A stretch of DNA of 63,972 nucleotides, counting the filler, from Octopus bimaculoides (lineage: Eukaryota), in assembly GCF_001194135.2 (NCBI RefSeq). It is 3 parts of 3 records of this genome, joined end to end, with 100 filler letters (N's around TTAATTAATTAA, not from the genome) between each part and the next. Parts side by side here need not be neighbours in the genome. Positions count along the whole stretch, not along the records: positions 38,118 to 63,972 come from NC_068996.1; 2 more parts are not named here. One strand, 5' to 3'. The notes under the pieces were generated by a model. It did no database searches, was not told the DNA's origin, and saw nothing but the letters and a program-made list of their open reading frames with translations. Below are positions 41,580-53,734 of this stretch, in pieces. Made by a program: the position numbers and the translations under genes. Position 1 is the stretch's first letter. The number at the start of each line of letters is the position of its first letter.

Positions 41580-42290
41580 TTGGGTATAAAAGCATCCAAA
41601 TTTATCAGCTTGTCACTCGTTTCCCGAACGCGGTAAGGATGCCAAGACTGACACGAAATCAGTGGGAGCAAGCCATCGGACGTCTCCATGCTGGTCAACG
41701 TCCATTGATCATTGCCAATGACTTGAACTGCAGTATTCGGACAACTGAGCGCCTGAGGGAACAATAAAGTGCCACAAACTGTACAGTTGATCGCCCACAC
41801 AGTGGGTGTCCGAGGTCTACGTCAAGATCACCACCTGCACCGACAGCACGTGCAGAACCGATTCCGGAGGACAACGGAATCAGCTAGGCAGACCAGAGGG
41901 ACCCACCACAGAGACATTTGTGCAGAGACAGTACGACGCCGGCTTAAATCTTTCTATATGTCTTGTCGATGTCCGGCTAGTGGCTCCATCGTCACAGATC
42001 GTCATCGACGGGCACTTCTGCAGTGGAATCAAATACGTCAGAACTGGCAATAGTGGAGGACTGTAGACTTCTCTGAACTAAAGTGTACATTGGATTGCTG
42101 TGGCAGATGGCAGAGTTAGCATTTGGAAAATGGGTGAAGGTCATGCCGATGGCTGCGTGGTGGAGAGAGACTCGTGGAGAGGATTAGAGCATCATCGTAT
42201 GGGGCGGGATTTCACTCAACGAGAAACTTGAACCGGTGGTCTTCCAAAATATCAGACAAGTTGGGGGCAATGAAGTAACCACTGCCTGAG
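41580..42290 (+). mobile_element. Tc1/mariner transposase pseudogene, 5' half
   Basis: TATAAAAG at 41585, ATG at 41639. MPRLTRNQWEQAIGRLHAGQRPLIIANDLNCSIRTTERLREQ*...DRPHSGCPR...ETVRRRLK...HRRALLQW...W*WRTVDFSE...DGRVSIW...ERDSW...SIIVWGGIS. Truncated before the second catalytic D. Confidence 0.88.
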
Positions 42291-51708: not shown

Positions 51709-51714
51709 TTTATT
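51709..51714 (-). promoter_or_regulatory. Candidate polyadenylation signal AATAAA, 10 nt after the EB1-like stop
   Basis: Plus-strand tttatt at 51709-51714. Confidence 0.4.
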
Positions 51715-51723
51715 AATTACGTT

Positions 51724-52623
51724 TTAAAATTTTTCATTAGTGTCTTTTAAAATCTCTACAATTTCCTCGTAAAATACTTTCAAAGTTTGAATTAATTTCG
51801 GTGTCAAATAATCAGTTGTATCCAAAACATTAGCCACAGGGAAACAGGCGCTTTCTATTTTTTTCATTGCTTCTGACAACAAAATGTTTCTTTTCGTAAC
51901 AGTTTCCAAAGAATACTTCAGTTGCATGTTATCATGTTCTAAACTTATGTTGTTCTGCTCCAGTGCCGTTGTAATTGACTTGAAGTAGTTATTGTCATTA
52001 GCAGTCATAGCGCTCGAGATTTCGTCGGAATCTACTGGCATTTTTGGTGCATCTTTCTTATCTGTTTTGATTTCCGTATTTGTGGTATGGTTTTTACATT
52101 TCATATCCTGTTCCATATTCATTAATTGTGCTTCGATTATTGCTTCGGGTTCGGGTGAATCCTTATCGACTTCAGGAGTAGGTGTTCCCGACTTCGAGGT
52201 ATCACCGATATTCTTAATTAACGTTTTTTTCTTGCAATATTGAGCGCGCAGCTGGAGTATATCATAGGGCTGCGAGTTGTAATTCGCATCAAAGAATGCT
52301 TTAAACCACAATCCAAAGAAAAAGTTGTGCTTAAATGTTCCCTTTATCAGGTCATCAATAGGAATGTCCTTCTTCAAATTAATCGAATTCAGTGCAGTTC
52401 TAAATTGCTTGAAATTCATGCGTCTGAAATACTCACAAGCATCGACAAATTTTACTTTTCTGATATCTATGCTACCTGGAAATAATATTTCCATGCCGAG
52501 GCAAAAATCTGCTCCTGTTGCAAGTTCTTCAATATTCTGAATGTCAGGTGAAAGGTATTTTCGAAACCAATTGAGCAATTCATTTTTACTGATATCTTTT
52601 ACATGAAAATGAGTGACTGCCAT
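51724..52623 (-). CDS. MAPRE: Intronless, divergent EB1/RP-EB family microtubule end-binding protein (299 aa)
   Basis: Open frame from aattATGG. CH-domain motifs MAV..., S+.ELL.W, IEEL.TGA.FC..MEILFPGSID.RKVKF, NFK, IPIDDLIKG.F..NF.F..WFK.FFDANY. EBH-like LKYSLETVTK...KKIESAC and IVEILKDTNEKF. Symbol is family-level, not an orthology call. Confidence 0.88.
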   Translation of the reverse strand: MAVTHFHVKDISKNELLNWFRKYLSPDIQNIEELATGADFCLGMEILFPGSIDIRKVKFVDACEYFRRMNFKQFRTALNSINLKKDIPIDDLIKGTFKHNFFFGLWFKAFFDANYNSQPYDILQLRAQYCKKKTLIKNIGDTSKSGTPTPEVDKDSPEPEAIIEAQLMNMEQDMKCKNHTTNTEIKTDKKDAPKMPVDSDEISSAMTANDNNYFKSITTALEQNNISLEHDNMQLKYSLETVTKRNILLSEAMKKIESACFPVANVLDTTDYLTPKLIQTLKVFYEEIVEILKDTNEKF

Positions 52624-52854
52624 AATTGAAATATGATAAACGAAGAAATGAGAGAGCGACAAGTCAACAGAATAAAGAAAATTACGGATTCCACAGATAT
52701 TATTAACGTTAAAGAATTTAAACGTTAACTATTGTATGATAGCGTCTGTTACTTTTAGATTCCTTTGATTTTGCAGTTTTTTATGTTTTTGCTTTTTTTC
52801 GAGAATAGACAATTTTTTTTCTGTTTGAAGAAAAACTAATTAATAAAACGTGAT

Positions 52855-52873
52855 TTGCTAATGACGTAGCAAC
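52855..52873. promoter_or_regulatory. Palindromic element TTGCTA-ATGACG-TAGCAA (CRE-like core with RFX-half-site-like arms), about 230 bp upstream of the EB1-like ATG
   Basis: Motif seen directly; function inferred. Confidence 0.35.
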
Positions 52874-53734
52874 GCTAAGACTTCGTTTTTATTTTCTGCA
52901 TTACACTTTCCTGAAATAACGACATTATATTAAACATGCAATGATCATTCTCCACAGACACGTGTATGTGCGCGTGTTTAAGTTTGAGAGAAAGAGTGAG
53001 TGCGTATGTGTGTGTGTGTGCTACAAGGCAAAGAATTGGCAGAATCATTTAGAGAATTGCGCAAAATGCTTTGCAACATTTGTTCTGGCTTTTTCAAATA
53101 CTATTTTAACTGAACTAGACAGATGAGTTCTGAGGAGTCAACAGTTCAACTATCAAGATCGGTTAATTTAAGTAGACAATAATGTGTCTTAGTACAACAT
53201 CTCCGCAAGGTTGTAATTGAAAGCAAACTGAATATGTTGTATAGATACGATAATCTTTATCTAATTTATCTTTACTACACTGTGGAGCTTAACGTTGACT
53301 TAAATGGTTTCGTCTTCAAAACAGCAAAAAAGAAACAAAGCAAGAAAAACAGAAGAAAAAAAACAAATTCTGTTTCGTTGTATAGTCAAGTTTCATCACA
53401 ATCGATAAAACACTGTAGGATGAGTTAGCTAACAATTCCACAAGCACACTTACAGACAGAATTTCCTACATATGTAGTAGACATACAGGGAAAGAGAGGA
53501 AAAACAGTCAAACATGTCGACATGTACGCAGACTGAAGAGTTTTCACACCTTAGATCTGAGAATGCCATTGCTCTTCTGGACTTACAAAATTCTGAGAAA
53601 CTCTGTGTAAAGTGGTGCAGAGTCAATCTGTTATTACATATTTACAGTTCTAACTGTATAAAATTTGTATAAAATCATATTACCACATTCTGACCACAAG
53701 ATAATTTGAAACCGCATCGATTTTTATAATAACA

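What the first reader, a model, noticed from the sequence alone, without database searches (positions are those of the whole stretch)
51724..52623. Intact intronless EB1 paralog that appears to have lost both +TIP cargo-binding sites
It is the only long open frame in a window where every transposon ORF is broken, which argues for selection or recent origin. Against human EB1 (recalled, not computed), the CH core and basic residues equivalent to K60/K76/K89 are kept, but K100>T, Q102>K and E106>F alter the lattice-sensing helix. In the EBH domain ERDFYFGKLR becomes RNILLSEAMK and ILYAT becomes ILKDT, removing Y217/F218/Y247/A248 of the SxIP pocket. The protein stops at the DEGF-equivalent (NEKF), with no acidic EEY/F tail for CAP-Gly partners. 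Prediction: a retrogene-derived EB that binds microtubules and dimerises but recruits no canonical cargo, i.e. a decoy, a heterodimer modulator or a sperm-specific lattice protein.
Basis: partly seen in the sequence, partly recalled or inferred. Interest (0 to 1): 0.72.

Follow-up and report, generated by a model that had tools for sequence, protein, structure and literature searches.

The report
Octopus EB-like gene lacking cargo sites
This is a real, selectively maintained, single-exon octopus gene for a microtubule-binding EB-family protein that has lost the family's two usual partner-docking sites; it belongs to an old cephalopod-wide group of such genes and resembles the testis-specific EB relatives already known in fruit flies.

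Summary
A 299-codon ORF lies on the minus strand (ATG 52623, TAA 51726-51724) of Octopus bimaculoides chromosome CM046616.1. Its N-terminus is an EB-type CH domain (41% identical to human EB1, no gaps).

It is not a pseudogene. Intact single-exon orthologues exist in O. vulgaris (syntenic) and in a third octopus. dN/dS is 0.24-0.50 overall, 0.11-0.31 in the CH domain, 0.16-0.31 in the C-terminal domain and about 1 or more in the linker.

It is not a lone, recent EB1 retrocopy. Its CH domain falls in a clade of 27 divergent EB-like CH domains from Octopus, Argonauta and cuttlefish. Every member whose genomic locus I could read is single-exon.

The C-terminus is a predicted helix-loop-helix whose heptad register matches EB1. 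EBH homology is only marginal (Pfam gives no hit; profile-profile P is about 1e-4). Only 2 of 10 SxIP-pocket residues are kept, and the protein ends at the residue equivalent to EB1 F253.

The C-terminal domain is the most constrained part of the protein. This argues for a new partner-binding role rather than an inert decoy. The closest precedent is Drosophila Mst27D. Expression and biochemistry remain untested.

The parts
51724..52623 (-). Complete single-exon CDS, 299 codons plus TAA, of an EB-like protein (Octopus bimaculoides, chromosome CM046616.1)
   Evidence: Orthologues of 301 aa (O. vulgaris) and 299 aa (third octopus) are intact.
52246..52599 (-). EB-type calponin-homology (CH) domain, aa 9-126
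   Evidence: PDB phmmer hits EB1/EB3 at 1e-26 to 1e-24. Pfam CH scores 25.7 bits against a cut-off of 26. AF2 pLDDT is above 90 here, and Foldseek matches EB1/EB3/Bim1/Mal3 CH domains with TM 0.86-0.94 and rmsd 1.0-1.8 A. omega is 0.11-0.31.
52279..52344 (-). aa 94-115, KGTFKHNFFFGLWFKAFFDANY. This helix carries the derived residues T96 (EB1 K100), K98 (Q102) and F102 (E106).
   Evidence: Alignment. There is no amino-acid change here in any of the three octopus pairs. The same derived states occur in the paralogues.
52009..52245 (-). Linker, aa 127-205. A short basic stretch (aa 127-146, net +4) is followed by an acidic, S/T/P-rich, predicted disordered region (net -7).
   Evidence: Charges. 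AF2 pLDDT is below 50. omega is 1.0-3.0.
51823..52008 (-). Long predicted helix, aa about 206-267, with seven heptads. 'd' positions are F214, L221, L228, L235, V242, L249, I256. 'a' positions are T218, N225, N232, L239, N246, M253, C260. It is the likely coiled-coil dimerisation helix and aligns in register with EB1 196-228.
   Evidence: AF2 helix 205-267 with pLDDT about 90. Heptad layout. Alignment register.
51727..51822 (-). Loop (aa 268-274) and terminal helix (aa 275-299, ...FYEEIVEILKDTNEKF). This is the positional equivalent of the second EBH helix, with Y247>K293 and A248>D294. The protein ends at the residue equivalent to EB1 F253.
   Evidence: There are only four amino-acid changes in aa 209-299 between O. 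bimaculoides and the third octopus.
51709..51714 (-). AATAAA polyadenylation-type hexamer ten nucleotides after the stop codon, conserved in all three octopuses
   Evidence: Read directly from the sequence; function is inferred.
52624..52905 (-). Conserved 5' proximal block, a putative promoter and 5'UTR. It includes a TTTAAAT-like element at 52716-52722 and TGACGTAG at 52862-52869.
   Evidence: Three-species alignment. Identity is 87-93%. Function is inferred, not tested.

Best explanation
This is a functional protein-coding gene. It is one subfamily of an old, cephalopod-wide group of single-exon EB-like genes.

Shown here. The reading frame is intact and under purifying selection. The CH domain is of the EB type. 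The canonical SxIP-pocket residues and the EEY/F tail are absent.

Inferred mechanism. The CH domain still binds microtubules. Three of the four residues known to tune where EB proteins sit on the growing tip are changed non-conservatively (I90>D, K100>T, E106>F). In addition, Q102 is now Lys, a change resembling the yeast Mal3 Q89R mutant that over-binds microtubules. The acidic auto-inhibitory tail is also gone. I therefore expect binding along the lattice, or to a different tubulin state, rather than comet-like tip tracking.

The seven-heptad helix probably makes a parallel homodimer. The very strongly conserved helix-loop-helix at the C-terminus no longer docks SxIP or CAP-Gly partners. 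It most likely docks a different, lineage-specific partner, so the protein would act as a microtubule-to-something linker or bundler, as Drosophila Mst27D does in spermatids.
For: Gene status. Intact single-exon orthologues exist in O. vulgaris (syntenic, 91% identical across the gene and its flanks) and in a third octopus. dN/dS by four methods is 0.24-0.50 overall, 0.11-0.31 in CH and 0.16-0.31 in the C-terminal domain, with Fisher p from 1e-3 to 2e-12. C-terminal CDS identity is 94% against 81-88% in the flanks.

CH domain. It matches EB CH domains at E 1e-26 and TM about 0.9. Its net charge is +2, the same as human EB1. Roth et al. 2018 (PMC6398475) show that even conservative changes at I90, K100, F105 and E106 shift EB2 about 280 nm back from the tip. 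Mal3 Q89R and Q89A bind microtubules excessively (PMC6459531). EB1 K100E/Q102E impairs binding (PMC5042579). The EB1 tail is auto-inhibitory (PMC6023887 abstract).

C-terminus. The heptad register is preserved in the orthologues and in the sister subfamily P0011, including Asn at two 'a' positions. AF2 predicts helix 205-267, a loop, and helix 275-298 with pLDDT 76-92. Only 2 of 10 pocket residues are identical (L246, E225), judged against the list in PMC5686072.

Precedent. Mst27D has a CH domain and a coiled coil but no EBH or EEY. It binds the lattice, forms homodimers, does not pair with Eb1, and its C-terminal region binds Nup358. It arose by retroposition in a testis-specific EB1 family (PMC10359004).
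Against: There are no expression data and no biochemistry. Microtubule binding, dimerisation and partner binding are all inferred from sequence. K100 and Q102 are contact residues, and loss of K100 together with the acidic linker (net -7 against +6 in EB1) could weaken microtubule binding rather than redirect it. The AF2 model is a monomer built with an alignment that contains canonical EBs, so its C-terminal hairpin may be biased towards EBH. Foldseek found no match to EB1 C-terminal structures. The equivalence of Mal3 Q89 and EB1 Q102 is recalled from the literature, not computed here.
Confidence: 0.6

Rival explanations
1. Decoy or poison subunit. The protein has no partner of its own. It acts by occupying EB sites on microtubules, or by forming heterodimers with canonical EB1, so that fewer +TIPs are recruited.
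For: The SxIP pocket and the EEY/F tail are lost. The EB-type CH domain and the heptad register are retained.
Against: The C-terminal helix-loop-helix, including the loop that varies in canonical EBs, is the most constrained part of the protein. A decoy would only need a coiled coil. Three Asn at 'a' positions face Ala, Val and Arg in EB1, which disfavours heterodimers; this is inference. Drosophila Mst27D did not co-precipitate with Eb1. The tip-specificity residues are changed, so competition for the same sites is doubtful.
Confidence: 0.12
2. The C-terminal domain is not a degenerate EBH. It is an unrelated coiled-coil sequence that replaced the EBH, so 'lost pocket residues' is a mis-description.
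For: Pfam EB1 (PF03271) gives no hit even at E 10. hhalign against canonical EBH gives probability 0.8-8.7%. Foldseek and a PDB profile search find no EB1 C-terminal match. Other clade members carry quite different C-termini, such as long coiled coils or a second CH domain.
Against: hhalign, iterated HMMER and MAFFT all choose the same register. In that register the a/d heptad positions, I224/E225/C228, L246 and the terminal F253 all line up. With cephalopod intermediates added, the profile reaches E 0.02-0.04 among 165 sequences, and hhalign gives 60.6% probability with P 8e-5. Paralogues show a graded series from a near-canonical EBH (P0019 EKRYFYEKLREIEKLC..VLYH) to this state.
Confidence: 0.2
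3. The protein is still a canonical +TIP hub. SxIP or CAP-Gly binding survives through a remodelled pocket, or an unrecognised downstream exon supplies an EEY/F tail.
For: L246, E225, I224 and C228 are kept, and L221>M and R222>K are conservative.
Against: Y217, F218 and Y247 are replaced by L, S and K. A248 becomes D. The residues after F253 that fold over the peptide are absent. The stop codon is at the same place in three species and is followed by a conserved AATAAA. The sister subfamily P0011 also ends without a tail.
Confidence: 0.05
4. It is a processed pseudogene drifting neutrally, and its frame is open only because it is young.
For: The CDS is intronless and lies in a repeat-rich, gene-poor region.
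Against: The frame is open in three species, with dS up to 0.3-0.4 between them. omega is well below 1 in both domains. The locus is syntenic between species. A sister subfamily shares the C-terminal domain at much greater divergence. The chance of such an ORF is about 2e-4.
Confidence: 0.02

Closest known systems
Canonical EB/MAPRE proteins (human EB1/EB3, yeast Mal3/Bim1)
   Same: The N-terminal EB-type CH domain is shared (41% identity to EB1, no gaps, predicted TM about 0.9), with the same net charge. The domain order is the same: CH, linker, coiled coil, short second helix. The heptad register and I224, E225, C228 and L246 are kept.
   Different: The Pfam EBH domain is not detected. F216, Y217, F218, K220, Y247 and A248 of the SxIP pocket are replaced. 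There is no tail after F253 and no EEY/F. I90, K100, Q102 and E106 on the tubulin-facing surface are changed. The linker is acidic rather than basic. The gene has a single exon.
Drosophila Mst27D and its testis-specific EB1-family relatives CG15306, CG2955 and CG32371 (PMC10359004)
   Same: These are also lineage-specific extra EB paralogues. Similarity to EB1 is confined to the CH domain. A coiled coil follows, with no EBH or EEY. Mst27D arose by retroposition. Mst27D binds along the lattice, homodimerises, and uses its C-terminal region for a new partner (Nup358).
   Different: The octopus gene has an independent origin in a different phylum. Sequence relationship of the C-terminal regions was not tested here. 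The expression site, the partner and the lattice binding of the octopus protein are all unknown.
Other members of the cephalopod EB-like clade (P0004/P0009 with two CH domains; P0012/P0014/P0168 with a CH domain plus a long coiled coil; P0019/P0046/P0082 with a near-canonical EBH but no tail; P0011 sister group)
   Same: They form one clade in the CH-domain tree and share derived residues at positions 100, 102 and 106. The three distinct genes whose genomic loci I could read (this gene with its O. vulgaris orthologue, P0004, P0168) all have single-exon CDSs. No member shown has an EEY tail.
   Different: This subfamily, together with P0011, has its own C-terminal domain. In this domain the aromatic FYF and Y247 positions are fully replaced.

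Membership tests
EB / MAPRE (RP/EB) family | N-terminal CH domain of the EB subtype | tested here: met
   phmmer against PDB hits EB1/EB3 at 1e-26 to 1e-24, Bim1 at 1e-11 and Mal3 at 6e-5. Foldseek TM to the target is 0.86-0.94, while other CH types have E above 0.1. The generic Pfam CH model scores 25.7 bits, just under its cut-off of 26.
EB / MAPRE (RP/EB) family | EB-homology (EBH) domain, Pfam PF03271 | tested here: not met
   No PF03271 hit at E up to 10 for the whole protein or the C-terminal 101 aa. The control protein P0005 scores 63 bits.
EB / MAPRE (RP/EB) family | Remote homology of the C-terminal domain to EBH | tested here: inconclusive
   The iterated profile gives E 0.02-0.04 among 165 sequences over aa 228-299. 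hhalign probability is 60.6% (P 8e-5) against the iterated profile but 0.8-8.7% against canonical EBH. The register is the same in every method. There is no structural hit.
EB / MAPRE (RP/EB) family | SxIP-binding pocket residues (F216, Y217, F218, K220, L221, R222, E225, L246, Y247, A248; PMC5686072) | tested here: not met
   In the common register these read L, L, S, A, M, K, E, L, K, D. Two are identical and three conservative; all three key aromatics are lost.
EB / MAPRE (RP/EB) family | Acidic C-terminal tail ending in EEY/F (CAP-Gly docking) | tested here: not met
   The protein ends ...DTNEKF at the residue equivalent to EB1 F253. The stop codon and AATAAA are conserved in three species.
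EB / MAPRE (RP/EB) family | Coiled-coil dimerisation | tested here: inconclusive
   There are seven heptads with hydrophobic 'd' positions, and AF2 predicts helix 205-267 at pLDDT about 90. No dimer model or experiment was available.
EB / MAPRE (RP/EB) family | Autonomous tracking of growing microtubule plus ends | not testable with these tools
   This needs live imaging or TIRF reconstitution. The changes at I90, K100, Q102 and E106 suggest altered specificity.
Processed retrogene | Intronless CDS while canonical family genes are multi-exon | tested here: met
   The CDS is a single exon here and in P0002, P0004 and P0168. Canonical lophotrochozoan EB genes are split: Helobdella 286 aa over 2286 nt, Lamellibrachia 320 aa over 11.5 kb with at least five exon blocks. 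The canonical EB1 gene of the octopus itself was not retrieved.
Processed retrogene | Poly(A) tract and flanking target-site duplication | tested here: not met
   There is no A-tract within 170 nt after the stop. No direct repeat pair brackets the CDS. This is expected for an old insertion, or for a DNA-level duplicate of an older retrogene.
Mst27D-type testis EB paralogues (functional class) | EB-type CH plus coiled coil, without EBH or EEY | tested here: met
   See the rows above. Mst27D is described in PMC10359004.
Mst27D-type testis EB paralogues (functional class) | Testis or spermatid-specific expression, lattice binding, and a new partner bound by the C-terminal region | not testable with these tools
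   No expression or interaction data were accessible, and no paper was found on these cephalopod genes.

The most novel reading that the evidence does not exclude
Coleoid cephalopods carry an old and apparently undescribed radiation of single-exon EB-like genes. It has at least six subfamilies, including proteins with two CH domains and proteins with a CH domain plus a 600-aa coiled coil. The radiation parallels, by convergence, the testis-specific EB1 paralogues of Drosophila. In this subfamily the EBH hairpin would have been rebuilt into a docking module for a new, cephalopod-specific partner, tying stable microtubule arrays (for example in elongating spermatids or in neurons) to another structure.
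Probability: 0.35. Interest if true: 0.6.

Novelty: new variant of a known kind. Interest (0 to 1): 0.45.

Why it matters
EB proteins are the hub of the microtubule plus-end network. Natural variants that keep the CH domain but drop both docking sites show which parts of the hub can be separated and reused.

This octopus gene offers a naturally occurring combination of changes at residues already shown to tune tip versus lattice preference (I90, K100, Q102, E106). It also has a strongly constrained C-terminal hairpin with no known ligand.

The wider result may matter more. Octopods and cuttlefish share a clade of such genes, with a graded loss of the EBH domain. That gives a second, independent case beside Drosophila for asking why EB duplicates are repeatedly recruited and stripped of +TIP binding.

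Tried and rejected
- **Canonical octopus EB1 not found.** The third and last homologue search, with a profile of canonical EBs, returned 3339 hits. The 120 listed contained no cephalopod. The octopus parent gene and its intron positions are therefore unknown, and annelid EB genes were used as comparators instead.
- **First structure prediction too weak.** AF2 with only the three orthologues gave pLDDT 43. It was superseded by a run with a 50-sequence alignment.
- **No structural or sequence match for the C-terminus.** Foldseek on the whole model found only CH-domain matches and no EB1 C-terminal structure. A PDB profile search with the C-terminal alignment gave only chance-level hits. Pfam on the C-terminal 101 aa found nothing.
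- **Logan contigs are not expression evidence.** L002 and L005-L007 have no poly(A) and are colinear with the genome, so RNA and DNA origin cannot be told apart.
- **CRE-like motif.** A search for TGACGTMA found no full match. Only a TGACGTAG half-site is conserved.
- **Retrogene scars.** No target-site duplication or poly(A) tract was found.
- **Other features in the piece.** Rfam and tRNA scans found nothing. Of ten other ORFs tested against Pfam, only one gave a hit, a Tc1/mariner HTH remnant.
- **Literature.** Searches found no paper on cephalopod EB-like genes.
Full report
**What is there.**
The finding's coordinates bracket a real ORF on the minus strand. The ATG is at 52623, the TAA at 51726-51724, and the product is 299 aa. 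The 312-aa version listed by the ORF tool starts at a TTG and reflects that tool's bacterial start-codon rule. The ATG and the MAV... N-terminus are conserved in three octopuses, whereas the sequence just upstream carries frame-breaking indels.

The open frame is far beyond chance. The stop-free run is 334 codons, against a mean of 123 and a maximum of 207 in 200 shuffles. About 2e-4 runs of 312 sense codons or more are expected in the piece. Every other long ORF in 38118-63972 is a microsatellite translation or crosses an N gap. The only transposon domain I could name is a Tc1/mariner HTH remnant at 41769-42053.

An exact protein look-up places the window on Octopus bimaculoides chromosome CM046616.1, assembly GCA_001194135.2.

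**Is it a gene or a relic?**
An orthologue of 301 aa (89% identical) is annotated in O. vulgaris as 'RP/EB family member 1-like'. It is a single uninterrupted ORF in a colinear region that is 91% identical across the gene and its flanks. A third octopus, known only from a Logan contig of run SRR11869390 with species unknown, has an intact 299-aa copy (84% identical) in colinear DNA.

Pairwise dN/dS by NG86, LWL85, YN00 and ML:

| Region | dN/dS |
|---|---|
| Whole gene | 0.24-0.50 |
| CH domain | 0.11-0.31 |
| C-terminal domain (aa 206-299) | 0.16-0.31 |
| Linker (aa 127-205) | 1.0-3.0 |

Synonymous changes exceed non-synonymous ones with Fisher p from 1e-3 to 2e-12. The conclusion does not depend on the dS estimate. 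Against the third octopus, the C-terminal CDS is 94% identical at the nucleotide level while the flanks are 81-88%.

Residues 94-115 show no amino-acid change in any pair, and residues 209-299 show only four between O. bimaculoides and the third octopus. A neutrally drifting processed pseudogene is therefore excluded.

**The CH domain.**
Residues 9-126 match the EB1 and EB3 CH domains at E 1e-26 to 1e-24. The match to human EB1 is 41% identical with no gaps, so EB1 numbering equals query numbering plus 4. Its CH part is identical to the PDB chains printed. Its C-terminal numbering agrees with the residues named in PMC5686072.

With a 50-sequence alignment AF2 gives pLDDT above 90 for this domain. 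Foldseek then returns EB1, EB3, Bim1 and Mal3 CH domains (TM 0.86-0.94, rmsd 1.0-1.8 A), far ahead of other CH types.

K60, K76 and K89 are kept. K100>T96, Q102>K98 and E106>F102 are changed. I add I90>D86.

These positions matter:
- Roth et al. 2018 showed that I90, K100, F105 and E106 face the neighbouring protofilament. Even the conservative EB2 versions of these residues move the protein about 280 nm back from the tip, and reverting them restores EB3-like tracking (PMC6398475).
- EB1 K100E/Q102E impairs microtubule binding (PMC5042579).
- Mal3 Q89R and Q89A bind microtubules excessively (PMC6459531). That Mal3 Q89 corresponds to EB1 Q102 is my recollection of Maurer et al. 2012, not a computation made here.

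The net charge of the CH domain is unchanged at +2. The linker, however, is basic only in its first 20 residues and acidic after that (net -7, against +6 in EB1).

**The C-terminal domain.**
Pfam's EB1 model (PF03271) does not hit the protein or its last 101 residues even at E 10, while it scores 63 bits on a control EB. hhalign of the three octopus C-termini against four canonical EBH sequences gives 0.8% probability (alignment aside, this is).

Two things raise the signal. First, the exhaustive representative search uncovered cephalopod paralogues with intermediate C-termini (next section). An EBH profile iterated through them aligns aa 228-299 end to end at E 0.02-0.04 among 165 sequences. 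Second, a query profile that adds the sister subfamily P0011 reaches 60.6% probability (P 8e-5) against the iterated profile and 8.7% against the canonical one. P0011's C-terminus matches ours at E about 1.5e-5 to 5e-5.

In that register:

| EB1 residue | Octopus residue | EB1 residue | Octopus residue |
|---|---|---|---|
| F216 | L248 | I224 | I256 |
| Y217 | L249 | E225 | E257 |
| F218 | S250 | C228 | C260 |
| K220 | A252 | L246 | L292 |
| L221 | M253 | Y247 | K293 |
| R222 | K254 | A248 | D294 |
| | | F253 | F299 (last residue) |

Measured against the SxIP-pocket list in PMC5686072, two of ten residues are identical and all three key aromatics are gone. The tail that folds over the peptide and ends in EEY is absent.

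The heptad positions line up as well. The 'd' positions are F214, L221, L228, L235, V242, L249 and I256. The 'a' positions are T218, N225, N232, L239, N246, M253 and C260. In EB1 the corresponding 'd' residues are L196, L203, L210, Y217 and I224, and the 'a' residues are V200, V207, R214, L221 and C228. The pattern is kept in P0011, including two of the Asn.

AF2 predicts helix 205-267 (pLDDT about 90), a loop, and helix 275-298 (pLDDT 76-89). That alignment contained canonical EBs and the model is a monomer, so the prediction may be biased. Foldseek found no EB1 C-terminal match.

My reading is that the domain is most likely a strongly diverged EBH hairpin. This is an inference; by the family's own model it is not an EBH domain.

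**Origin and relatives.**
The exhaustive search found 1492 relatives. The top ones, scoring well above canonical EBs, are a set of divergent proteins. In a neighbour-joining tree of 163 CH domains they form one clade of 27, and P0001-3 are sister to the P0011 group. NJ on long branches is a rough guide only.

Named members come from O. bimaculoides, O. vulgaris, O. sinensis, Argonauta hians and the cuttlefish Acanthosepion pharaonis. The clade therefore predates the split between octopods and decapodiforms.

The architectures vary:
- two tandem CH domains (P0004, P0009);
- a CH domain plus a coiled coil of several hundred residues (about 600 in P0168; also P0012, P0014);
- a CH domain plus a near-canonical EBH without a tail (P0019 'EKRYFYEKLREIEKLC...VLYH'; P0046 and P0082 '...ILYEEGLPM');
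- the present type.

The states K/R100>T/S/N, Q102>K/R in most members, and E106>F/Y/A are shared across the clade. They are therefore old, not specific to this gene.

All four members whose genomic loci I could read have single-exon CDSs: this gene, its O. vulgaris orthologue, P0004 and P0168. Canonical annelid EB genes are split by introns. This fits one ancient retroposition followed by duplications. No poly(A) tract or target-site duplication remains here, and I could not retrieve the octopus canonical EB gene.

**How it most likely works.**
Shown: the gene is a constrained protein-coding gene with an EB-type CH domain, a conserved heptad helix, and none of the canonical cargo-site residues.

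Inferred:
- The CH domain binds microtubules with altered preference for tubulin state, probably the lattice rather than the tip.
- There is no auto-inhibition by an acidic tail (the EB1 tail is auto-inhibitory; PMC6023887 abstract).
- The helix forms a parallel homodimer. Asn at 'a' positions opposite Ala, Val and Arg of EB1 disfavour heterodimers.
- The C-terminal hairpin and its loop are the most constrained part of the protein, so they probably bind a new partner.

That makes a linker or bundler more likely than an inert decoy.

**Comparison with what is known.**
The closest functional precedent is Drosophila Mst27D. It is spermatid-specific, and its similarity to EB1 is limited to the CH domain. 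It has a coiled coil, decorates the lattice and bundles microtubules. It homodimerises and does not co-precipitate with Eb1. Its C-terminal region binds Nup358. It arose by retroposition from CG15306, within a set of testis-specific EB1-family genes (PMC10359004).

The octopus gene belongs to the EB family by its CH domain. It fails the EBH, SxIP-pocket and EEY tests. It works, I infer, like the Mst27D class, but it is an independent cephalopod lineage with its own C-terminal domain.

I found no paper on these cephalopod genes. The O. vulgaris orthologue carries only an automatic name.

**Verdict.**
This is a new variant of a known kind. It is of moderate interest on its own, and of somewhat more interest as the entry point to a coleoid-wide EB-like radiation. 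Expression, microtubule binding, dimerisation and the partner all remain to be tested.

Noticed in passing
L001 6023-6480 and 7583-7814 (O. vulgaris, upstream of the orthologue at 10001-10906): Two broken partial copies of this same gene, covering roughly aa 85-203/259 and aa 86-163 (39-43% identity by tblastn), lie 2-4 kb upstream in O. vulgaris. None was found in the O. bimaculoides piece, but the corresponding stretch there contains N gaps (about 53.9-54.5 kb and 55.4-56.3 kb).
   Followed up: partly
L003 10001-11326 (O. bimaculoides chromosome CM046603.1; protein P0004) and Argonauta P0009: This paralogue has two tandem EB-type CH domains in one single-exon ORF. Its second CH domain shares T100, K102 and F106 with this gene. 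Its C-terminus retains an EBH-like remnant, 'EKLQRIETIC'.
   Followed up: partly
L008 3001-5286 (O. sinensis, P0168, named 'interaptin-like'): A single-exon 761-aa protein made of an EB-type CH domain followed by about 600 residues of coiled coil. Argonauta P0012 and the unnamed P0014 have the same design.
   Followed up: no
window 52246-52623 compared with 51727-52245: Synonymous divergence from the third octopus is about three times higher in the CH-coding part (27 of 73.8 sites) than in the rest of the CDS (15.5 of 103.6; Fisher p 0.0014). It is also higher than in the non-coding flanks (12-19%). The effect is not seen against O. vulgaris and is unexplained.
   Followed up: partly
window 52009-52245 (linker, aa 127-205): The linker evolves at omega 1.0-3.0 while both flanking domains are constrained. 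It is acidic overall, unlike the basic linker of EB1. There are too few sites to separate relaxed from positive selection.
   Followed up: partly
window 52862-52869 (+ strand), 52716-52722 and 51709-51714 (gene strand): Non-coding elements conserved in three octopuses: a TGACGTAG (CRE-like half-site) about 240 nt upstream of the ATG, a TTTAAAT-like element about 95 nt upstream, and AATAAA ten nt after the stop. TGACGT motifs also precede the ORF of the sister gene (L005 70-100).
   Followed up: no
window 41769-42053 (+): A short ORF with a weak match to the Tc1/mariner transposase HTH (PF01498, E 3.5e-4, below the cut-off). It is a decayed transposon remnant. Nine other ORFs tested gave no domain.
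   Followed up: yes
window 38118-63972 in general; for example 52985-53020: The piece is 37% G+C, contains 2966 N in several assembly gaps, and is full of (TG)n, (TA)n and (TATG)n-type microsatellites, which produce most of the 'long ORFs'. A (TG)n run about 370 nt upstream of the gene is also present in O. vulgaris. There are no Rfam or tRNA hits.
   Followed up: yes
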